Assembly (NCBI RefSeq): GCF_030028105.1
Contig: NW_027276046.1
Span: 1-45,698, forward strand
Direction: 5' to 3'
Source: Mobula birostris
Taxonomy: Eukaryota
Length of the DNA stretch: 45,698 bases
Position 1 is the first letter of the stretch; every line of letters begins with the position of its first letter. This document shows positions 1 through 16,025 of this stretch, piece after piece. The notes beneath the pieces were generated by a model. That model was not told the DNA's origin and ran no database searches. It worked only from the letters and a program-made list of their open reading frames with translations. The position numbers and the translations under genes were made by a program.

Positions 1-854
1 ATCTCTGGTTCACTGAGGCACACAAGCCACGATACTCTTTGACAAGATTGTGGTCCTCTTGGGGGTAAAAAGAAGTTTCACTATTTTGACTGGTGCCATG
101 GTGGGGTTGTTGTGTCAGGTGGACATAAAAGGTTTGGAAAGTTCTCCACTATCTGTTCCGACATTGATCCCTCAACCAGTATCACACTGAAACAGGTTAA
201 AAAGATTTTGTGGGGAGAACTGCTGAGGGCTTGGCACTGAAATTCATGGTGCCAAGTCCCTGAAAGAGAAAATACCTTATAAGTGTAAATTCCACCCATT
301 TCCACCAGGAATCGCTGTTTAGCATTGATTCTTGTGGTGTGGGAGCAGTGAGAAGATTGTGTGGTAACTCTTTTTGTTGCTTCATACATTTTCCTGCAAA
401 GACAGTCTCAGCCTATGTCTCTAAGGAGAATATCTGTCCATTGACTGGTCTCTCAGTCCCTGTCTCCCGGGGGATATCTGTCCACTGACTGGTGTCTCTC
501 ATTCTCTCTCGCTGGGATTCTGTGTGTTTCAGTTTAAACAAACTGTTCATCGCTGAAATTGATGAATCGAACAGAGAGTGACCGATCTTTAATCCGGATC
601 TGGTCACTGCCGCTGACCTGCCGCCTGTTGCAGAGACAAACATCTTTTGGGGAATTGAAATCGCTGCTGTGGGTGGGGACAGGAAGCTGCGCCTCTGGTT
701 TCAGTGTGTGAGAGCCTGTTCAAACCGCGGCTCCCTCTCTCACTCACAGCCCACGTCCCTATCTAAACAGCGCTCACTGCGACTCCGGACAAAGCCGGCC
801 TGAGCTGAAGCCGCCGATCTCAAAGTGTCCAAGTCCGGCTCAGTGTTCAGGGCG

Positions 855-900
855 ATGGGGGTCGTGCCTTATTTCTGTCTTCCCTTGTCTTGTCTGGCAG
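855..900 (+). CDS. IgW: Ig heavy-chain leader exon (L1)
   Basis: ATG at 855; 46-nt exon [16 protein letters not shown] ending at a phase-1 donor G|GTGGGT. A 109-nt intron (901-1009) ends ttttttattgacAG, and the signal peptide is completed by GVRS in the V exon, the typical Ig leader architecture. Confidence 0.9.
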
Positions 901-1009
901 GTGGGTGTCCCGCCGCTTGTCGCTCAACCGGGACCGGCTGTTTCTCAGAGGCTTTGTGAACCCCTGACCGTGGAACATTTTATTAATTTCTGCTCTTTTT
1001 TATTGACAG

Positions 1010-1314
1010 GCGTGCGGTCCGCCGTCGTGCTGACACAGCCCGAGTCAGCTTGTGGTAAAGCCCGGACATTCTCACAGACTGACTGTGCGGTCAGTGGGTT
1101 CAGCCTCGGCAGCTATAGCATGGACTGGGTGAGACAGGTCTCCGGGAAAGGGCTGGAGTGGCTGGCAGACATATCGAGTGGTGGTAACAAGTACAACGCG
1201 CCTGGAGTCCAGAGCCGGTTCACTGTTTCCAAGGACAGCAGCACCGTCTATCTGCAAATGAACAACCTGAGACTGGACGACACGGCCACCTATTACTGTG
1301 CGAGAGGGTGGGAG
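1010..1314 (+). CDS. IgW: IgW-type VH exon with short D-like 3' extension
   Basis: Translates as [90 protein letters not shown]. Canonical Cys (1084-1086), WVRQ, LEW and YYCAR (Cys 1297-1299) are present. FR1 between 1051 and 1083 is out of its usual frame (see findings). Confidence 0.93.
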
Positions 1315-1342
1315 CACGGTGATGGGGAGCTGAACAGAAATT
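1315..1342 (+). other. Recombination signal sequence, 12-bp spacer
   Basis: Heptamer CACGGTG (1315-1321), 12-nt spacer ATGGGGAGCTGA, nonamer ACAGAAATT (1334-1342; consensus ACAAAAACC), immediately after the V coding end. Confidence 0.8.
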
Positions 1343-3797
1343 GGTCCCGACAAAGGAGTGTCTGCAGCGCAGTCTGTCTCCACGGATTCCGCATTGCTGC
1401 TTCCCAGAGTCAAATCCCTGAAGCCTTACTCGGACTGCTGGGCGCAAATGCCCATTTCTGGACAATTAAAAGCCCAAAAGGATTTGACTCTGATTCTGGG
1501 GGATGGCGGGAGCCGGTGTCCGCAGACAGGGAAATTGTGAAAATGCCTTTACTCACACGCCAACAAGAGACAAGGACAGAGTTTGGGATGGAAATCCTGG
1601 AAGCGGCTGCTCCCGGTCCGGACAGGGATCATGTTGATATTTAGAGAAAGTACATGAATCTCCCCGAACCGGCGGGTTTCTCTAGAGCACAGTAACAGTA
1701 CAAGGGTACACACCCCACCCACCAGTGCACTGTCCACAGACCGGGAACAGGCTCAGGGGAATGGGGTCGGATCTTGTCACCAGACTGTGCCTTGACACCG
1801 GCCGATTGTGCTGAGTGAGCTCAGTGTTTGGTTCAAGTCTGGCTTCTGATCCTCAGCACCGACTGAAGCCACGTTCAGGGGCTGAGCGTTTCAGTGCAGT
1901 TGAACTTGTTCCCTGTCAGTGACAACAATGGATCTGTTCGGTGTCAAATTACTGGGATTGGGTTTTACTGTCGGCTGCTTTCATGTTGAAGGTAATGGGA
2001 TTCAGACATAATCTGAGGGAACGGTGTACACATGTATGATCTGGTTGATGTCTCAATATCCCCAGGGTACAGGTGGGTGTCAGTCCCATCATGTAATGTC
2101 CGGCATGAGGTCCGTCCTGGGATACAGCAAAAGTATCGGCGATATCCCAGGATTAATTGATGGAATTGAGGTTTTAGTTTTATTCCCTGATGGGCGAGGA
2201 GGTGGGGTACTGTGGGGAAGATTTTTGGAGTTGGGAAGGCAGTGGGGAAGTGGTGCAGGAAAGGTAAGGCGGGGAACTGAAATCTCAATTCCTTCACACG
2301 TTCCGGGCAGCCTTGCATTGTTGGGTGGGGGAGTGGGGAGTGGTGCAGGTGGGGTGGGGAGGGAAGCGTTCAATTCAATAATGTGTAATAGGGGAGCATT
2401 TAAGGGAAGGTTTGTTGATGAAGGTTTGTGATCTGGGACACACTGCCTGAATGATGGTGATGGCCAATAGTGAGTGTGGAGAGGGAACAGGATGAGATCC
2501 GCCTTTTGTAGGGATACAGGGAAGAGCAGAGAGACCAATGGGTCTATTGGGTTTGCTCAGCTAAATGAAGCACAGAAACAATAGGATGAACGGCCTCACT
2601 CTCTGCTCTATCATTCAATGGAATCAGTATTTATCTTGTAAATCTGGGAAATTCTTCCTCAAAGGGATTCCAACAAGCACCCCAGAGTACACAGAGCATG
2701 AGTTAAATGCAGATCACAGCTCCCATGTCCTGTCCTGGCAGCCACGGATTAGATACAAAGATCCTTCTGCACTGTCCCATCCCTCCCAGGACAGGGGCAG
2801 CAGAGATTAGACACAGAGTGAAGCTTCCCCCAACCTGTCCCATCACACACTCACGGGACACGAGTTGAACTTTACTGTTCAAATGAACTGTTTATTCTTA
2901 GTTCACAGACAGAGCAACTCATCTAATTTCTTGTCCTCCTCCATCCCCCGACTGGGTTTGTTTAACAAGTGTTTTCCTACGTTAACCAGTGTTGCTGGTG
3001 ATTCAGTAAAAGTGGTTGTGAGATAAAGTGCTGACATTTACAGAGCACCTTTCATGGTGCCCCCGAGGTCTTCACAGGCAATGAAGTTGTTTCAAAGTAC
3101 AGCCCTGTTGTAGAGTCGGGAATGTGGAGCCACTCTGCATACAGCAGAATCCACAAACTGCAAGGCGAGAACGATCAGACAGTCTGTTCTGGTGATGTTA
3201 TTGAAGGAGAAATATTGTCCAGGACACCGTGGACACAGTGATCCAATGGACAGGCACAAGGTTGGATTTGGAGTGATTGGAAACAGGACAGTACATCAAA
3301 GCAAATGAGTAGTGCAGAGGGATGGATGAACAGTCCACGGATACCACCATAACAAAATTGACAAATTTATACTCAGTTCATAATACAGATTTGGATCTGT
3401 GGTCGGATTTCCAAGATTTTAATAATTGGTATTGTTTTTAAATCCAATCATTGGTAATGATGACCCTTCAGTTTTACTGATGTCCCTCAGGGAAGGAGAT
3501 CTGTCATCCTGACCCTTCGAGCCTATTTATGACTCCTGATCCATCAATGTGTTTGTCTCCAAATGCCCTCTGAATAGCAGCTCAGATGCGTAATTCATTC
3601 AGACTTTACCGGCAAAGCCCAGATCCCAAAGGATGAATAAATAAAACTGCCCACCTTTCGTTCATACTACCCGATATTCTATCCACTTAGTACAATACAG
3701 ACTAAAATCAGACTGAGTCTCCCCCAATCTGCTGATTCTGGGCAATCATTTCGTACAAATTCCCAAGTGTTATTTCATTGCAAATTTCTTCTGAGCT

Positions 3798-7249: not shown

Positions 7250-7831
7250 AGGTCAAGTCTGCACCATCAGTCTACATCACTCCTTCCTGCAACACAGAAT
7301 CTGACCAAGGCATCAGCCTCCTCTGTCTGGTCAAGGACTATCAGCCTGAGAGCATCAGTCAGACATGGTCCACTAACAGTGGGGACATCACCACTGGAAT
7401 TAAGAAATTCCAGGCCGGCTGGTGGCGCAGTGAGATCAGCACCAGATTCTGGAGCGAATGTTCCCGAGTTCAAATCCTGGTTAGGCCACTCCCTAGCACG
7501 CTTTCCCCACTCCCGAGCACACTGTCCATCCGTGCCCGGTTGAGTGTCGAGATAGCCACTTGGCCTCGTAAGAAATATATAAGGGTCAAGTCAGGAACGT
7601 TCATAACATGACCCGGTTAATCCTGACACCACGTGCCAGACAAGAATGGCTGAACGTCTGGTATGACATGCTAAAAAAAAAATAAGAAATACCCGGCGGT
7701 GTTGGGGCAAAATTCTAAGTACATAATGAGCAGCTTGCTTGAAGTCTCTGCGGCGGACTAGAAGAAGAATAAAGTCTACTCCTGCAAGGCAGGGAGTGTG
7801 ACATCGCAGTGGCAGAAACCTCAACCTCAAT
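7250..7831 (+). pseudogene. IgW: IgW CH1 exon, disrupted by a SINE insertion and a nonsense codon
   Basis: Acceptor ccatttcAG at 7248-7249. The 5' half reads EVKSAPSVYITPSCNTESDQGISLLCLVKDYQPESISQTWSTNSGDITTGIKK. After a 282-nt insert it resumes KYPAVLGQNSKYIMSSLLEVSAAD*KKNKVYSCKAGSVTSQWQKPQPQ, with TAG at 7759-7761 where Trp is expected. Phase-1 donor T|GTTAGT at 7831/7832. Without the insert the exon is 300 nt. Confidence 0.93.
7412..7682 (+). mobile_element. tRNA-derived SINE inside CH1
   Basis: A-box-like TGGCGCAGTGAG and B-box GTTCAAATCC; A10 tail at 7673-7682; target-site duplication TAAGAAAT(T/A)CC at 7401-7411 and 7683-7693. Confidence 0.88.
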
Positions 7832-8788: not shown

Positions 8789-9065
8789 CCATCCCGGGAG
8801 GCAATCCACGGGCAAGCAAATGTTGTCCTGGGCTGTGTGATATCTGGATTCGCTCCTGACAACGTTAAAGTATCCTGGAAAAAAGCTGGATCTGCCCAAA
8901 AAGGCATCATTCTCCCTTCCACTCCGAGATCTGATGGTGGATTTGAAACAATCGCTTACCTGACAGTGCCTGTGCAGGAATGGACCAAGAAACAGAAATA
9001 TATTTGTGAAGTGAATCACGCACCTTCCAGTTTCAGTGGTCAGGTCAACATGACGTATCAAGAGG
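8712..9065 (+). CDS. IgW: IgW CH2 exon (start 8712 or 8766 depending on acceptor)
   Basis: From 8766, a 300-nt open frame APKLSSLVPSREAIHGQANVVLGCVISGFAPDNVKVSWKKAG...LTVPVQEWTKKQKYICEVNHAPSSFSGQVNMTYQE with C1-set Cys/Trp/Cys; donor G|GTGAGT at 9065/9066. Confidence 0.93.
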
Positions 9066-9748
9066 GTGAGTGATGTCTGAAGAAAAATTAATTATCTTAC
9101 AATACTAAACTACTTAACTGATACTCCCACCCAATTCCTGTCCCTACTGTCGATCTTGTTGAGTGATGTACAGATGAGTCTTGCACTTTGAATCAACTCA
9201 TATCACCAGCAGCTTTAACCCCATCTACTGGGCAGGAAAGGTGTAAGATCAGGTCACCTGTCCATTCCGTCTCAATAATTTTAGTTGTCTATGTTTGTAG
9301 TTATAATGAAAATAATTTAGTGAGCAAAGCTCACGTCCCATGTTTTACCTTCTAGAGAAAATCTCCCTGTTCCCTTTTCACTGTCTTCTCAGTGTTAGTT
9401 CCTCAAAAAAATATCTCTGCAATTTTGCATTTGTTTCAGTCTCCAGAGTCTATTTCCAGTGTTTCCTGAGAGACTCTTCTGTCGATTGTCCACTCACTGA
9501 AATGTAGGTGGCGGGATTAATTTTGAATTGATGCCCAATCCTCAAGTGAATGTTGTGACCTTGTGTCCTCAGATCCTTGACCAGGTTCAGAGAGCACATT
9601 CATTTATCATGGCTGACAAAACCTCATCCTGATAGGATGTGACATACAAAGGATACAGAGTGGGAATATGTGGGGCTCCCTTTTTTCCAAGCATGGGAAA
9701 AAAGGTAAAAATATCTAACACTTAAATCTATGAATCTTCCATTTCCAG

Positions 9749-9879
9749 GTGGAAAATGTCCCAGCTGTTTTTCGGAGCCTGTGCCAAAGTTCTTTTACCA
9801 GAGTAATCTCAATGCAACATTCTCCGATGGTTCTACCCAACAGTATCATTGTTCAGCAGGAAAGTGTGAAATAAAGTGA
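9749..9879 (+). CDS. IgW: IgW short-form secretory tail exon
   Basis: Acceptor atttccAG at 9747-9748; phase-1 frame GGKCPSCFSEPVPKFFYQSNLNATFSDGSTQQYHCSAGKCEIK-stop (TGA 9877-9879). A Cys-rich tail ending in CEIK is what I recall for short IgW/IgX secretory forms. Confidence 0.85.
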
Positions 9880-9981
9880 TTGGCTGTGTATACAATTCAT
9901 CAATGAATTTTATTGCTATCCACTTACTGGATTCTAGACCTGCCTCTGGTATCCATTGGGATTGAAGTTTAACAGAGAGAG

Positions 9982-9987
9982 AATAAA
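9982..9987 (+). terminator. Candidate poly(A) signal for short secretory IgW
   Basis: AATAAA about 100 nt after the secretory stop codon; a second AATAAA overlaps the last codons at 9870-9875. Confidence 0.6.
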
Positions 9988-10029
9988 ACACGATTGAAAC
10001 TGACTACCTCTCCAATCACATTTCTATTA

Positions 10030-10665
10030 TCCTCGTGGCCACCTATTTCAATTTGACTTTCCATTCCCATTCTGTCATGTCTGTCCATGGGCTCCTCTAC
10101 TGCCATGGTGAGGCCAAAGTCAGGTTGGAGTAGCAACACCTCATATTCCATCCAGGTACCTGCCAAACTGATTCCATGAATACTTATTTTTTAACTTCCA
10201 GTAATGATCCCCCACTCCTTTATTCTCCCTTTTATTCTATTCCTCATACTAGATACACCCTCATCCCTTCGTTTCTCCTCACCTTCCCATCATTTCCATT
10301 TGGTTCCCCTTCTCCTGCACTTCCCTCCATGGTCCACTGTCCTCTCAGATTCCTTCTGTTTCAGCCATTTATCTCTTCCACTTATGCCCTACCAGCTTCT
10401 TACTTCATACTGCCTCCCCCATCCACACACTTTCCCCCTCACCTGGTCTCACCTCTCATCTGACAGAATGTATTCCTCTCTACTCCTCCCACCTTCTTAT
10501 TCTGGCTTCTGCCCACTTCCTTTCCTGTACCAGTGAAATCTCTCAGCCCAAAATATCGACTGTTTATTTCCATCCATAGATGCTGCCTGACTTGCCGAGT
10601 TCCTCCAGCACTTTGTGTGTGTTGTTCAAGATTTCCAGCATCTGTAGAATCTCCTGTGTTTCTGG
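10030..10665 (+). mobile_element. Penelope-like element 3' remnant (GIY-YIG C-terminus plus pyrimidine-rich UTR)
   Basis: Degenerate coding resembling the ...RLEEQHLIF...NF* end of the Penelope endonuclease, followed by a CT-rich tract and the GATGCTGCCTGACTTGCCGAGTTCCTCCAGCA...AGATTTCCAGCATCTG tail I recall as common in batoid genomes. Confidence 0.7.
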
Positions 10666-12607
10666 TTGTCCATACACTCATTCATTTGTGTACATTGTTG
10701 CTTCAGTGTGACTCAGATCCCAATTCCAGTTTCTTTGGCCAGATTCCCTGTTGTCTAACTCCAGTCAGCAAGAACTGGAACCTGTTTTTCACCCAATGGC
10801 TGTGAGGCATGAGGTGATGAAGGTGAACGGGGCTGAAATTCTAAATTGACTCTGTCAAAGGACGGATGACCCTTTGATAATGTTGGGCACAAGACAAATC
10901 GGTGAGACAAGACACAGGGGTCTAACCAGTCTCCTGTCCAATCTGTTATGCTTTGTGTTTAAATCCTGGATCAGACAAATTGCTAAAGTTACATTGGTCC
11001 ACGTGCCGGACACTGAATTCAGTCCAAGAGGGCAACTCAGTGATCCCAAGGAATATCAGAAAGGAGAATGTTTTGTTAGAATTACTCAAGCAATGACAGA
11101 ATTCTATACTTCTTGTGGAATAACACCAGCATTCAGCAATAAAGGGAACATTTCCAAGTGACTGCTGAACATCAAGACAGTGCTGATATGGGACATAACT
11201 GAGAAACCTGCAAAAAACATGTTTAACAACATCACAGTGCTGATTAAACTGCGATTCACAATTCAGTGACTCTTCAGTGTACACCTAGGTTTGCATATTT
11301 ATGATATTACACGACAACAATGATCATCTGGACCACACCAACGGACTTTCTGTTTTAAAAGAAAATTGCTCATAATCTTACTGAAATGAGAAAGGTTAAG
11401 AAATACACATCATACCTTGTCGGATGATCCGACCCAGTCAGACTGGAACCGTGTGTGTTGCGTCTGCTCTTTCTTCAGACAAAGACAGTGACTCATAGTC
11501 TCATTGAAGGTCTCAGCCATGACACAAACACAATCCGCCTCCACACTAAATGTCAAAGAGCAAAAACACCCCACGGGCCTGAAGGTGACCGAGTGTGTAA
11601 ATGGTGAACACAAAGTGCAGAGAGCTGCAATGTAAGTGAACTGACGATCGTGCATTGGGAGACGACCTCAACAACTTCACTTGAGTGCAATCACACAAAA
11701 CTGACTCTAACCAGAGTACAGGTGACCCAACACTTGATCAAAGAGCTGTTTTATTCATTTATCATTTCCCATCGATCACTGATCTCTCTGGAACTGAGGG
11801 ACTTGCTGCCTCCTTCCTGATGGTGATTCAGCTCCAGCCGTGTTGCTGGAATCACAAACCAGCCAGACCAGACGAGGCTTCTCTCCGGAAGTTACCACAG
11901 AGAATAACACTACAAATACCTCTGTAGTCTTCTTTTATTCCAAGAAGCATTGATGAAATGAATATAAACTTCCATCCACCGGGTTGGGATTTGAACCCCT
12001 GTTGCCAGTTCATCAGTCCCTAATTTATGGATACACTCTGACCACAGCTGCTCATTTCAAGTGAGACAGAGACTTCAGTGTTTGTCAGCAAGAATGCTAA
12101 AACCACAGGCACCAGCAGAAGTAGTGCAGGTGTATGAGTGAGCAGAGTTGAAAGAATACGATGTTGTCTGAAGCTTGTGTGGGTGGTGAAGGTTGCAGAG
12201 ATGAGGAGAGGCACAGCCACAGTGAGACTGGAATGTCGGGATGTGAAGTTATTAAACTGAGTGAATCCCAGGCTCAGCTCAGATGGAGAAAGGAATTCTC
12301 ATTGATTCACAGTGTTCATTGTTACTAATCAATGGCACTGAGTCTCCAAGCAAAGAATATACTGAGCTGTGTCTCTGCTGAGAAATCTGCATGCTTCTCT
12401 GTCTCACAGAGCTCCGTCTCACAGTGAACCGATTGGTACAGTTATTAGAAAGGGATTCGAAATTTAGTTAGCACATCTTTTGTTCTGATTTTCTCTTCTT
12501 AATCAAAGCTAACAGGATTATGAGACACATGATTTAGCCCTGGACCTAACACAACCAATGGAAATATCTCCAGTAAGATTCTGAGCATTTCCATTTCTAA
12601 CCCACAG

Positions 12608-12910
12608 AATTGTCTGTATTTATTCAAAATCCCGACATTGAAGAGATGTGGATCGACAAGTCTGCTTCCGTGAGGTGCACAGTTATCTGTACAGATCCCG
12701 AAGACATCCACGTCTCTTGGCACGTGGGCGGGAAGGAGAAAACTAAAGGAATTCACACCCATCAAGCGGAGAGGGACGGGTCCCGATACAGAGTGCTCAG
12801 CGAACTCCAGATCAGTGTGGAGGAGTGGTTCAGTGGGGTGGAGTATGAGTGCTCTGCTCAGGAATCTCCTTCAGCTTCCCCAGTGTCAGCACGGACCAAT
12901 AGCACCAAAG
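12608..12910 (+). CDS. IgW: IgW CH3 exon
   Basis: Acceptor cccacAG at 12606-12607; 303-nt open frame ELSVFIQNPDIEEMWIDKSASVRCTVIC...VSWHV...SVEEWFSGVEYECSA...RTNSTK; donor G|GTGGGC. Confidence 0.92.
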
Positions 12911-12998
12911 GTGGGCAAGAGACCAGTGATTAAATGGCCAGCATTAGTTACCTGAGTCAAAATGTTTGACATTTCCTTTGTTTTCTTTTCTATTCCAG

Positions 12999-13316
12999 TT
13001 GAGATAAGAAGTCCCAAGGTCAGACTGCTGCCTCCAGCTCAGGAAGAGATAAAGAATTGGAAAACAGCCACACTGGAGTGTGTGGTCTCTGGATTCTACC
13101 CGGATCAAATAAATGTCACCTGGGAGAAAGGCAGCACCGTGATCACCTCCAACACCAGCGCGACACCGACCGCTCTGGAGCAGGGGTGGACTTTCAGTGC
13201 CGGACACTTCCTGACCGTGAGTTTACAGGAGTGGAAGACAGAATCAGTCTTCAGCTGTACAGTGACTCATCCTCCCTCCAACAGCAGTATCAAGAAGCAA
13301 GTGAAGAACGTCCAAG
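12999..13316 (+). CDS. IgW: IgW CH4 exon
   Basis: Follows an 88-nt intron; acceptor tattccAG; 318-nt open frame VEIRSPKVRLLPP...TLECVVSGFYPDQINVTWEKG...EWKTESVFSCTVTHPPSN...KNVQ; donor G|GTAGGG. Confidence 0.92.
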
Positions 13317-13429
13317 GTAGGGTCCTGGGACTCAACCCATTATTGAAATTGTTTACATTGTGCAATGAATTCAAGGTCAGCACTGAATCACGGTGCAGTC
13401 CTGGTTTAGTTTTGTGAGTGAACTGATAA

Positions 13430-13870
13430 AGTTGAAAGTACAAAGCACATTTATTATCAAAGTATGTGCACCATATACAACTTTGAGATTCTCTTCTTGC
13501 AGACAGTCACAAAACAAAGAAATACAATAGAATTCAGGGTCAAACATCCAATGCGTGAAAGAGAAAGAACAAATTGTGCAAACAATAAAAAAAATCCAAA
13601 CAAACAATCTACAGAACCTGAACCGCAGAGCCCCCTGAAGTAAATCCACAGCCACGTTGCCAGTTCAGCACTGCAGCCGGTCCAGGAGACCGATGGCTGC
13701 AGGCCACGGCCGTGGAGCCAGGCTCAGTGCTGAGGTGAGTGCCGATGGCTGCAGGCCGCAGCTGCAGAGTCAGGTCAGTGCTGAGGCGAGTGAAGCCTCG
13801 TCGAGAAGTGAGCCGAATACCGGTTTGTCCATTGACTCAGCCTCAATGCCTTCATCTTTTTAATCACTCT
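13430..13870. repeat. Interspersed repeat, class unresolved (related to 22570-23190)
   Basis: Shares the ...ATTATCAAAG...ATACAACTT...CAGA.AG.CAC.AAACAA.AAA motif with 22575-22670 and contains a short internal duplication (CCGATGGCTGCAGGCC...CAGTGCTGAGG twice). Confidence 0.5.
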
Positions 13871-14665
13871 TAGCACTTAAAACGGCCAATCATGGGTTTG
13901 TTTTCCACTCTCAACCAACATAATCCACACTTCCACCACAGAAATAAGAGTATCCCAGAAAATACTTTCATAACTGGAGGAGAATCCCGACCATTTCACT
14001 GGACAGGCACTCTGGAAATCGCTGATACGCGGCTTCAAAATGTTCTCTCCATCTGCCTTTGAACATTATCCCATGCCTCCAATCAGTGTCTCAGTTGTGA
14101 CTGAATTTCCAGCAGAGCAGCTCTCCCTCTGCTCCTGTGTGGGAATAGTCAGCCTGGACAATGTGTAGAAGCCTCTGGAGGGCAGCTTGAACACACAACG
14201 TTCTGACAAAGCAGCAGCAAATTTTCGTTACACCTTATAGAGAAAAAGAGTGTATTTTAATATTTGTGACAGAAACTAAATATTTCTCATAAATTTTGAA
14301 ATATGAAGTGTATTTTCTGGAAGATTTTCATGTGAAACTTTGCTCTGTTTCCTGTGCCACCGACACACTCTGAAATACTGGGGATTTTCTGTATTTGTTT
14401 TAATAAGTATCTGGGAACAGTTTAAGTGACTATGAAACTGCAAAAACAATGTAAGGGCCAATCTTGTTCATTTACGTTCCCTCATGGTGTTTACCCTGTC
14501 TGCTCAAAAGGGGAGATTCCTTTCTTCACCAATGTAGATTGGTCTCATCTCGTCTTGATGGGACTGGCAAATCGTTGACCAGAGATGAACAGAAATGCTG
14601 GTCTTGTCAGTGAGAAATTCGTCCATTGGGGAATGGTAAAATAATAATTGTGACATTTCTCCCAG

Positions 14666-14986
14666 ATGACTGTCCAGACACCCGCCCCTCTGTCACTTTA
14701 AGCAAACCTTCCTTCGAAGAGGTCTGGACAAAGAGGACAGCGACTATTCTGTGTGAGGTGGTTCACAGTGATTTACAGGGATTCAGTGTAATCTGGCAGG
14801 TGGACGGAAGGAAGAGGGAAGATGGGGTGAGGATTCTGGGTCCAGACAGCAACGGAGGTGAAGACATGATCACCAGCAGACTGACAGTCCCTGCTGCAGA
14901 GTGGAACAGTGGGGCTGAGTACTCATGTGTGATAGAGGACAAGAGTTTGCCAACACCAGTGAAGAAATCCATCAGGAAGAACTCAG
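14666..14986 (+). CDS. IgW: IgW CH5 exon
   Basis: Acceptor tttctcccAG; 321-nt open frame DDCPDTRPSVTLSKPSFEEVWTKRTATILCEVVH...VIWQVDG...SRLTVPAAEWNSGAEYSCVIEDKSLPTPVKKSIRKNS; donor G|GTACGT. Confidence 0.92.
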
Positions 14987-15639
14987 GTACGTGCAGACAG
15001 AATTCAGTGTGAGTCTGATCTTAGCAACTGGACAGATTTATCAACATCCAGCACTGTGATAGACTATAGAAAATGAGAACAGGAGCAGGTAACTGGGTCT
15101 CTCAATCTGCTCAACCATTCAATCTGGTCTCAGCTGATCATCCAAATTCAATCCCTTTCCCTGTTTTCTCCAGGTATCCTTTGACCCATTCACCCGAAGA
15201 AGTATATTCAACCCATTCTTGAATATATTAGATGATGTCTTCAAGTGCTTTCTGTGGGAAAGAGTTCCACAGGTTCTCACTCCCTCTCACAGGTACACAG
15301 CTTAGACTGCCACCCCTGCTCCAGGGGAGATGGAACAAACAGCACAGGATAATGCAAGTCCAGGGGCTGAGTTCCACTTTCTGTCGAGTTGCTGTGTTCA
15401 GTGACTCCCGTTGATTAAATTGAATAAACTAACCTCGCTGGAAGCTGTAAAATGCAGCAGGTTCAAGATTTCCACTCCACAAATCCCAACGACGAGCTGA
15501 AAGGGAAAAGCCTTTAGTTTCAGATAAAGTGAAACCTCTCAGATTTAGAAATTGTTCATGTTGATGCAAGACCAGAATGTGTTGGATACGTAGGGAATTA
15601 TTGTAAGATTCATTCTAACTGAGATTCTCTCTGTTCCAG

Positions 15640-16025
15640 GTGGTGTTGTGACTCGTCCTCATGTCTACCTCCTTCCCCCTTCATCGGATGAGGTAGTCAC
15701 CGATCAGACTGTGACCTTGATGTGCCTGGTCACCAAGTTCTCTCCCACTGAGATCTATGTGGCCTGGATGGTCAATGACACCCTTCTGAAGACAGGGTTT
15801 GTGAATCAGCCAGTGACCAAGGACCCCAGAAATGGCTGGAACACAATGACCAGTCAGCTGAAGGTTTCTCCTGAGGAGTGGAATAGTGGCACCACTTTCT
15901 CCTGTGTGGTGGGTCATGAGTCGCTCCCAACCAACCTGTTCCGAAGCATCAATAAATCTCACAGCAAACCCACCCTGGTCAATGTCTCACTCATTCTGAC
16001 TGATAGTTTTAAATCTTGTGTGTAA
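15640..16025 (+). CDS. IgW: IgW CH6 exon with long-form secretory tailpiece
   Basis: Acceptor ctgttccAG; GGVVTRPHVYLLPPSSDE...TLMCLVTKFSPTEIYVAWMVND...EEWNSGTTFSCVVGHESLP...SINKSHSKPTLVNVSLILTDSFKSCV-stop. The tailpiece has the N-V-S sequon and penultimate Cys. Confidence 0.94.

What the first reader, a model, noticed from the sequence alone, without database searches (positions are those of the whole stretch)
1297..1342. VH carries a 12-bp RSS and extra D-like bases: apparent germline-joined V-D
Seen: after YYCAR come GGGTGGGAG and then CACGGTG-12-ACAGAAATT. Established: chondrichthyan VH segments carry a 23-type RSS, the 3' D has a 12-bp RSS facing JH, and germline-joined VD(D)-J clusters are known in sharks and skates. 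Inference: RAG acted in the germline (or this is DNA from a rearranged B cell), fusing V to the last D and deleting the V-D intervals. No separate D segments with paired RSSs were seen downstream.
Basis: partly seen in the sequence, partly recalled or inferred. Interest (0 to 1): 0.7.

Follow-up and report, generated by a model that had tools for sequence, protein, structure and literature searches.

The report
Germline VD-joined, J-less IgW pseudogene
This antibody heavy-chain (IgW) gene of a cartilaginous fish was inherited with its V piece already fused to D pieces by the antibody-cutting enzyme RAG, a long-known quirk of sharks and rays. This copy has since lost its J piece, is otherwise broken, and exists in about eight near-identical transcribed copies.

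Summary
After TGT GCG AGA (1297-1305) come GGGTGGGAG (1306-1314), CACGGTG (1315-1321), a 12-nt spacer (1322-1333) and ACAGAAATT (1334-1342).

- Unjoined IgW clusters of the same genome read V-23RSS / 12-D1-23 / 12-D2-12 / 23-J.
- The window matches their V up to 1306 and their D2 3' end, 12-RSS and flank from 1311.
- About 865 bp between V and D2 is missing from the window.
- GGGTGG equals the conserved 3' end of D1 and GAG the end of D2, so this is probably a V-D1-D2 join.

The join is germline, not from a B cell. Eight copies plus a roughly 2.5% diverged sister cluster share the junction. Other clusters carry different junctions before the same RSS and are scattered among open clusters on a tree.

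New for this copy:
- A 211-bp deletion removed J and its 23-RSS, so the 12-RSS has no partner in cis.
- FR1 carries a +1/-1 indel pair.
- CH1 holds a 268-bp insertion.
- RNA contigs still cover V, the junction, the RSS and the J-deletion point.

The kind is long known. The scan had already found VD-joined IgW clusters elsewhere in this genome. Interest is low.

The parts
855..900 (+). Leader exon (ATG 855-857; donor GT at 901-902)
   Evidence: Sequence. RNA contigs of run X2 skip 901-1009 with GT..AG ends (table 5). These contigs may come from any V of the family.
1010..1306 (+). VH exon up to the last V-derived base (GCGAGAG). FR1 carries a +1 insertion near 1050 and a -1 deletion near 1083, which scramble 12 codons ([12 protein letters not shown] instead of AVVKPGQSHRLT).
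   Evidence: Translation. Pfam V-set matches only from residue 26. DNA alignment with 11 paralogues. blastn homology to the V of open clusters ends at 1306.
1307..1314 (+). D-derived junction: GGTGG, which with the preceding G gives GGGTGG (the conserved 3' end of D1), then GAG (the 3' end of D2).
   Evidence: D1 is ACTATACTGGGTGG, ACTATGCTGGGTGG or ACTATACAGGGTGG. D2 ends in ...TGGAG or ...TGGAC in open clusters. Cluster L025 shows an untrimmed V-D1-D2 join before the same RSS.
1315..1342 (+). 12-spacer RSS inherited from the 3' side of D2 (CACGGTG, 12 nt, ACAGAAATT). The nonamer change C8>T is specific to the eight copies.
   Evidence: It has the same heptamer and spacer as the D2 3' RSS of open clusters L044, L045 and L047. 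L053 differs at one spacer base.
1343..1635 (+). Former D2-J intervening sequence, retained.
   Evidence: About 92% identical to the stretch that follows D2 in open clusters.
1636..1644 (+). Scar of a 211-bp deletion that removed the J segment, its 23-RSS and its splice donor. The read-through ORF from V ends at TAG 1642-1644.
   Evidence: Alignment and blastn (window 1642 and 1636 correspond to L044 1831 and 2042). Sister L031 keeps J with TGG>TGA. No J-like match anywhere in the window.
1645..1991 (+). Former J-CH1 intron start, covered by RNA contigs up to a possible cryptic donor AG|GTAATG at 1991/1992.
   Evidence: Contigs 1608-1843 and 1608-1991 have 0 differences. Depth falls to about 0 after 2011. 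Contigs continue for 28-30 unlike letters beyond 1991.
7270..7830 (+). CH1 exon interrupted by a 268-bp insertion (7416-7683, about 13-nt target duplication).
   Evidence: blastn against clusters L061 and L062. Pfam C1-set matches only profile positions 1-49. The insertion is shared with sister cluster L063.
8790..16022 (+). CH2-CH6 exons and the secretory tail, giving an IgW-type six-domain constant region.
   Evidence: Ig-like ORFs. Pfam C1-set E 2.7e-15 to 4.8e-21 for CH2, CH4 and CH6, weaker for CH3 and CH5.

Best explanation
The window holds an IgW heavy-chain cluster whose V segment was joined in the germline to D1 and D2 by RAG-mediated V(D)J recombination. This deleted the V 23-RSS, both V-D and D-D intervals and the inner RSSs. 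The 12-RSS from the 3' side of D2 was left directly behind a coding joint (GCGAGAG-GGTGG-GAG).

The joined cluster then decayed. First came a +1 insertion in FR1 and a 268-bp insertion in CH1, both shared with a sister cluster. Later, in the window lineage only, came a compensating -1 deletion in FR1 and a 211-bp microhomology deletion that removed J with its 23-RSS.

The dead unit was then copied by very recent segmental duplication of at least 45 kb. There are six near-identical copies on contig C12 plus two unplaced contigs. It is still transcribed from the V promoter as a read-through RNA that cannot encode a heavy chain.

Shown: the anatomy, the homology to open clusters, the shared junction and the RNA contigs. 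Inferred: that RAG was the enzyme, that it acted in germ cells, and the order of events.
For: (1) Open clusters in the same genome have V|CACAGTG-23-ACAAAAACC, then 12-D1-23, 12-D2-12 and 23-J. The window equals V plus the D2 3' end, RSS and flank, with about 865 bp missing exactly between the coding ends.
(2) At least seven different junction sequences, 11 to 24 nt long, precede the same 12-RSS in other clusters. This shows the trimming and addition typical of coding joints.
(3) On a tree of the 1.49 kb 3' of the RSS, the joined state needs at least 4 changes. Joined L043 nests with open L044 (98*).
(4) One cluster keeps a perfect heptamer-to-heptamer 23/12 signal joint beside an inverted D2. 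This is a direct RAG signature in the same gene family.
(5) The same junction is found in 8 copies and in sister L031 (100* clade; 97.5% identity over 9.5 kb).
(6) The J deletion, FR1 indels and CH1 insertion are shown.
(7) RNA contigs match V 1024-1278 exactly. They cross the junction and RSS (1278-1426, 2 differences) and the J-deletion point (1608-1991, 0 differences).
(8) Literature: VD-J, VD-DJ and VDJ germline-joined clusters, attributed to RAG in germ cells, are described in PMC5192425, PMC4279169 and PMC2193156.
Against: No DNA from sperm, fin or a second individual was examined. The junction words were found only in DNA runs of the probable source sample.

The eight copies are so alike (0.07% divergence or less) that some could be assembly redundancy. 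The window contig is identical, over the 3 kb compared, to C12:19.41 Mb.

Whether the extra bases are D1+D2 or N bases plus a D2 variant (TGGGAG) cannot be settled. The sister clade L034 has ATGGGAC.

Runs X1 and X2 are only guessed to be RNA, although leader-intron skipping supports it. Contig depths cannot be assigned to single copies.
Confidence: 0.88

Rival explanations
1. Somatic rearrangement: the assembly captured DNA of a rearranged B-cell clone, so the join is not inherited.
For: The window is a small unplaced contig of 45.7 kb. Only DNA runs of the probable source sample hold the junction words.
Against: Six chromosome-placed copies and a sister cluster about 2.5% diverged carry the identical junction. 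A somatic event cannot be copied to nine loci and then diverge. The cluster has no J, so it could not have been selected in a B cell.
Confidence: 0.02
2. Primitive state: V with a short CDR3 stub and a 12-RSS is the ancestral form, and the open V-D-D-J clusters arose from it by insertions.
For: VD-joined clusters outnumber open ones among the IgW-type clusters sampled (17 against 4).
Against: Junctions differ in length and sequence between clusters. Joined clusters are nested among open ones. The window junction contains the 3' ends of D1 and D2 as found in open clusters. The V 23-RSS is the common state, including in the more distant V array at 23.8-24.3 Mb.
Confidence: 0.02
3. A non-RAG deletion (replication slippage or end joining after a random break) happened to fuse V and D2.
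For: The same cluster did suffer an ordinary microhomology deletion, the 211-bp J loss.
Against: The end points fall within a few bases of the two RSS heptamer borders, here and in more than 7 other clusters. A retained signal joint in the family shows RAG acted on these genes.
Confidence: 0.03
4. The unit is still used. The VD-12RSS joins in trans to a 23-RSS J of another IgW cluster, or the eight copies serve as gene-conversion donors, like the fused-VD pseudogenes of the chicken.
For: The V frame was re-opened by a -1 deletion 38 nt after the +1 insertion. I estimate the chance of that at about 0.02-0.03, given 11 gap openings in 9.5 kb. The unit has been amplified to about 8 copies and is transcribed. 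The heptamer CAC and the nonamer A-tract are intact.
Against: FR1 is scrambled over 12 codons with an extra Cys, and Pfam V-set fails on that part. dN/dS is 0.5-1.2, with no sign of constraint. No in-cis J exists for hundreds of kb, and CH1 is broken. No expressed VDJ carrying this FR1 signature was seen.
Confidence: 0.05

Closest known systems
Partly germline-joined (VD-J, VD-DJ) IgH clusters of cartilaginous fishes (reviews PMC5192425 and PMC4279169; mechanism in Lee et al. 2000, PMC2193156)
   Same: V is fused to D-derived bases in inherited DNA. The outer D RSS with a 12-nt spacer is retained. Open paralogues with V-23 / 12-D1-23 / 12-D2-12 / 23-J sit in the same genome. Junctions show trimming as in coding joints.
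   Different: This is an IgW-type cluster; the reviews I read describe partial joins for IgM clusters. The cluster has since lost J and is a multi-copy pseudogene, so it is VD-(no J) rather than VD-J.
Other VD-joined IgW clusters noted by this scan in the same genome (s1-145179, s1-145250, s1-145300)
   Same: Same phenomenon, same 12-RSS, same gene family.
   Different: Those were described as one-step VD-to-J clusters with a J present. The window family lacks J. It carries its own junction, GGGTGGGAG, and its own nonamer variant, ACAGAAATT.
Chicken pseudo-VH genes (germline-fused VD segments used as gene-conversion donors; discussed in PMC2193156)
   Same: Multiple fused VD units that cannot rearrange to J on their own.
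   Different: No evidence here of gene conversion. These units keep a leader, a promoter, an RSS and a full (broken) constant region.
Nurse shark IgM1gj (fully VDJ germline-joined, expressed in neonates; PMC4279169)
   Same: A product of germline RAG activity in a heavy-chain cluster.
   Different: IgM1gj is fully joined and functional. This unit is only VD(D)-joined and non-functional.

Membership tests
Germline-joined VD-J heavy-chain cluster of cartilaginous fish | V coding end fused to D-derived bases with no RSS or intron between them | tested here: met
   About 865 bp of V-D1-D2 interval is missing relative to open clusters. The junction is GCGAGAG-GGTGG-GAG.
Germline-joined VD-J heavy-chain cluster of cartilaginous fish | Retained 12-spacer RSS of the last D, homologous to the D2 3' RSS of open clusters | tested here: met
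   Same heptamer and spacer as L044, L045 and L047. The flank is about 92% identical over 330 nt.
Germline-joined VD-J heavy-chain cluster of cartilaginous fish | Unjoined paralogues carry a 23-RSS on V and separate D1 and D2 with paired RSSs | tested here: met
   nine V loci with CACAGTG-23-ACAAAAACC or a near variant; full V/D1/D2 layout in L044, L045 and L053.
Germline-joined VD-J heavy-chain cluster of cartilaginous fish | A J segment with a 23-RSS downstream, so that one step completes the gene | tested here: not met
   J and its RSS are removed by a 211-bp deletion, and no J is found anywhere in the window. The sister L031 keeps J with a stop codon.
Germline-joined VD-J heavy-chain cluster of cartilaginous fish | Join present in non-lymphoid or germ-cell DNA | tested here: inconclusive
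   Indirect only. There are nine paralogous loci with the same junction and about 2.5% divergence. No sperm or erythrocyte DNA and no second individual were available.
IgW (IgD-orthologous) isotype | Six C1-set constant exons followed by a secretory tail, as against four in IgM | tested here: met
   CH1-CH6 are C1-set and the tail KPTLVNVSLILTDSFKSCV lies at the end of CH6. A further CH3'-CH4' pair fits the 6-8 C exons reported for nurse shark IgW (PMC5192425). No direct alignment to a named IgW protein was possible.
Functional Ig heavy-chain gene | Intact V framework, J and CH1 | tested here: not met
   FR1 +1/-1 indels, J deleted, CH1 interrupted by a 268-bp insertion.

The most novel reading that the evidence does not exclude
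The J-less VD-12RSS unit is not mere debris. After the join it regained an open V frame, was amplified to about eight near-identical copies and is transcribed to a cryptic splice donor. It could therefore be a maintained element: a pool of fused-VD donors for gene conversion or trans-cluster joining in a ray, or a regulatory or decoy RNA or RSS for the IgW locus.
Probability: 0.05. Interest if true: 0.7.

Novelty: new member of a known kind. Interest (0 to 1): 0.25.

Why it matters
It adds a well-documented case to the evidence that RAG has repeatedly acted on antibody genes in the germ line of cartilaginous fishes. Here every intermediate form is seen in one gene family of one genome: open, V-DD-J, VD1-D2-J, VD(D)-J, VDJ and an inversional product.

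This particular copy shows what happens afterwards. A joined cluster can lose J, die and still be amplified and transcribed, which leaves orphan 12-RSSs scattered over about 1.2 Mb of the locus. For annotation, these units should be flagged as pseudogenes and not counted as one-step rearranging IgW genes.

Tried and rejected
- A J-like site at 2176-2263 (23-spacer RSS-like motif, a WGSG reading and a GTAAG donor) was rejected. The region is homologous to the intron after J in all clusters, and no J homology exists in the window.
- dN/dS of the V exon against four paralogues (0.5-1.2 on 9-27 differences) was uninformative.
- A protein search with the CH6 exon gave one unnamed hit and did not name the isotype or the species.
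- A junction-specific run search sampled only 4 words and found only the probable source sample. It could not show the join in a second individual or in the related organism B.
- PMC332511 (skate IgX genes) is not held, so I could not check whether VD joins of IgX/IgW were reported there.
- The species was not tested. Earlier notes of the scan call it a manta ray.

Full report
OBSERVATION

The sequence is as described.
- TAT TAC TGT GCG AGA at 1291-1305
- GGGTGGGAG at 1306-1314
- CACGGTG at 1315-1321
- the 12-nt spacer ATGGGGAGCTGA at 1322-1333
- ACAGAAATT at 1334-1342

The upstream part is a VH gene. The leader exon is 855-900, the intron 901-1009 and the V exon starts at 1010. Pfam V-set matches with E 2e-10.

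As a bare motif the RSS is weak. A loose scan gave 25 hits in the window. Its 26-mer core, however, occurs 31 times in the 4.0-Gb genome and 0 times as a reversed control. All occurrences lie on the V-bearing stretch of contig C12 or on two small unplaced contigs. In every copy read, a fused V end or a D end sits just upstream.

WHAT IT IS

A protein search of the window's own genome found 87 VH matches. Reading their 3' ends gave two classes.
- Nine V segments end GCGAGAGA (or a near variant) followed directly by CACAGTG-23-ACAAAAACC or a close variant.
- Many others have V, a variable stretch, and then the same 12-RSS as the window.

In three open clusters (L044, L045, L053) the full layout is as follows.
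- V with a 23-RSS
- about 370 bp
- 12-RSS, D1 (ACTATACTGGGTGG and variants), 23-RSS
- about 335 bp
- 12-RSS, D2 (ATATGGAC, ATATGGAG or ACTATAACTATGGAC), 12-RSS

J follows about 385 bp later. It reads ...YWGGGTSLTVTS, sits behind a CACTGTG heptamer and ends in a GTAAG donor. The 23-nt spacer of the J RSS is assumed from the classical layout; I did not measure it.

The downstream constant exons of these open clusters are homologous to those of the window, so they are the right comparison.

blastn of the window against these clusters and a multiple alignment gave three results.
- Window 677-1306 aligns to V.
- Window 1311-1642 aligns to the last bases of D2, its 12-RSS and the D2-J flank, at about 92% identity.
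- The roughly 865 bp in between is absent.

The extra bases are best read as D1 plus D2. GGGTGG is the conserved 3' end of D1 in all three open clusters, and GAG ends D2. Cluster L025 shows an untrimmed V-D1-D2 join (...GGGGTGG + ATATGGAG) before the same RSS. The alternative reading, N bases plus a D2 variant TGGGAG, cannot be excluded.

GERMLINE OR SOMATIC

The V is 100% identical at protein level in eight places. Six lie on contig C12 between 18.6 and 19.75 Mb. The other two are the window contig C2045 and contig C3868. All eight carry the same junction.

A ninth cluster (L031/L011, C12:18.465 Mb) has the same junction. It is 97.5% identical over 9.5 kb, with 185 mismatches and 11 gap openings. 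It forms a 100*-supported clade with the eight copies.

A somatic event cannot be present at nine loci that have since diverged, so the B-cell alternative is rejected.

Direct proof from non-lymphoid DNA or from a second individual is lacking. The junction words were found only in DNA runs of the probable source sample.

MECHANISM

Other clusters carry different junctions before the same RSS. Examples are GCGAGAG-TATGGAC, GCGAGAC-ATGGGAC, GTGAGAC-AAAGTGAGGTGTTGGAG, ATAAGAGA-TCAGTCATGGAG and GCGA-TTTGGAG.

On a maximum-likelihood tree of the 1.49 kb 3' of the RSS, the joined state needs at least four changes. Joined L043 nests with open L044 (98*). Joining therefore happened repeatedly.

The end points sit at the heptamer borders with variable trimming, which is the signature of coding joints.

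The same family also contains several other forms.
- A V-DD-J cluster (L042).
- A VD1 join that keeps the D1 23-RSS (L024).
- A fully joined, out-of-frame VDJ (L030).
- One cluster (L020/L052) in which the D1-D2 interval is inverted. It has a D1-inverted-D2 coding joint and a perfect 23/12 signal joint left in the chromosome.

The signal joint is direct evidence that RAG made these changes.

The literature attributes germline-joined shark genes to RAG activity in germ cells (PMC2193156; reviews PMC5192425 and PMC4279169). That the enzyme acted in germ cells here is inference.

STATE OF THIS CLUSTER

It is not a working VD-J gene.

(i) J is gone. The alignment shows a 211-bp deletion with a short microhomology at 1636-1642. 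It removes the J RSS, J and the J splice donor. The sister L031 still has J, with TGG changed to TGA. No J-like sequence exists anywhere in the window. The RSS-like site at 2176-2214 is spurious.

(ii) FR1 is scrambled. A +1 insertion is shared with the sister, which stays frameshifted. A -1 deletion 38 nt later is found only in the eight copies. Together they replace AVVKPGQSHRLT by [12 protein letters not shown]. Pfam V-set matches only from residue 26.

(iii) CH1 is interrupted. A 268-bp insertion at 7416-7683 has an about 13-nt target duplication. It is absent from clusters L061 and L062 and shared with the sister.

The order of events follows. The VD(D) join, the FR1 insertion and the CH1 insertion came before the split from the sister. 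The J deletion, the FR1 -1 deletion and the nonamer change ACAGAAACT>ACAGAAATT came after it. Last came amplification of a unit of at least 45 kb.

Window 27-30 kb is found at about 100% identity at the expected distance from the C12 copies. Over those 3 kb the window contig is identical to C12:19.41 Mb, so it may be a redundant contig.

EXPRESSION

Runs X1 and X2 behave as RNA. The leader intron is skipped with GT..AG ends, and depth in the intron is zero in X1. Four sets of contigs bear on this copy.
- 1024-1278: an exact match to the window V, including the aberrant FR1.
- 1278-1426: crosses the junction and the RSS, with 2 differences.
- 1608-1843 and 1608-1991: cross the J-deletion point with 0 differences.
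- Beyond 1991: the contigs continue for 28-30 unlike letters.

Depth falls from about 80-900 to about 0 after 2011. The sequence at 1991/1992 is AG|GTAATG.

My reading is that the J-less copies are transcribed through the RSS and spliced from a cryptic donor. The ORF stops at TAG 1642-1644, so no heavy chain can result. The splice partner is unknown.

COMPARISON AND NOVELTY

Partial germline joining of heavy-chain clusters in cartilaginous fishes is textbook knowledge (PMC5192425, PMC4279169).

This scan had already reported VD-joined IgW clusters in this genome (s1-145179, s1-145250, s1-145300) and the inversional cluster (s1-145305).

What is specific here is the later history: J loss, decay, amplification and continued transcription. 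dN/dS gives no sign of constraint. I estimate that a frame-restoring indel would arise by chance with a probability of about 0.02-0.03. That is suggestive, but it is a post hoc estimate.

VERDICT

It is a new member of a known kind, of low interest.

Noticed in passing
G000:C12:21847500-21848700 (minus strand; loci L020 and L052): Germline inversional RAG product. V is joined to D1, then to an inverted D2. The inverted D2 5' 12-RSS now faces J. The 405-bp D1-D2 interval is inverted. A perfect heptamer-to-heptamer signal joint (D1 23-RSS | D2 3' 12-RSS) is retained. It is single copy in the genome, so paralogy cannot prove it germline. The scan already noted it as s1-145305.
   Followed up: partly
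window 1050-1083: A +1 insertion in FR1 is shared with the sister cluster. It is compensated by a -1 deletion 38 nt downstream only in the eight near-identical copies. This re-opens the V frame but scrambles 12 codons and adds a Cys.
   Followed up: yes
window 1340-1992: RNA contigs cover the RSS, the former D2-J interval and the J-deletion scar. They stop at AG|GTAATG (1991/1992) with 28-30 further unlike letters. This suggests use of a cryptic splice donor in place of the lost J donor. The partner exon is unknown.
   Followed up: partly
window 7416-7683: A 268-bp insertion with an about 13-nt target duplication splits CH1. It is absent from two other IgW clusters and shared with the sister cluster at C12:18.455-18.465 Mb (first-reader note s1-145844).
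   Followed up: partly
G000:C12:18.92-18.94 Mb and 19.57-19.58 Mb, compared with window 1009-27000: In two of the six C12 copies the distance from V to the segment matching window 27-30 kb is about 12.8 kb shorter. That is close to the CH3-to-CH3' spacing in the window (about 13.3 kb). The second CH3-CH4 pair may therefore be a tandem duplication that is present in some copies and absent in others.
   Followed up: no
L042 (G000:C12:20955291-20958316): A V-DD-J cluster. V keeps its 23-RSS, but D1 and D2 are fused (D1 5' 12-RSS + ACTACAACTGGCTGGAG + D2 3' 12-RSS).
   Followed up: partly
L024 (G000:C12:20116229-20119522): V is joined to a long D1-side stretch of about 26 codons with two Cys. The D1-type 23-RSS is retained (a VD1-D2-J configuration). 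The junction is unusually long.
   Followed up: no
L030 (G000:C12:20610054-20613287) and L018 (G000:C12:21954035-21957331): L030 is a fully joined VDJ with a very short, out-of-frame junction. L018 is a VD join whose 12-RSS heptamer is truncated to GTG.
   Followed up: no
G000:C12:23.79-24.32 Mb: A dense array of V segments about 10 kb apart, 50-66% identical to the window V and carrying 23-RSSs. Its D2 3' 12-RSS has nearly the same spacer as in the IgW clusters (ATGGGAAGCTGA against ATGGGGAGCTGA). These may be IgM-type clusters next to the IgW region. The isotype was not checked.
   Followed up: no
window 1642, run X9 (organism B): DNA contigs of a related species continue past 1642 with the undeleted J-bearing sequence. 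The J deletion was not seen there. Whether that species has the same VD junction is unknown.
   Followed up: no
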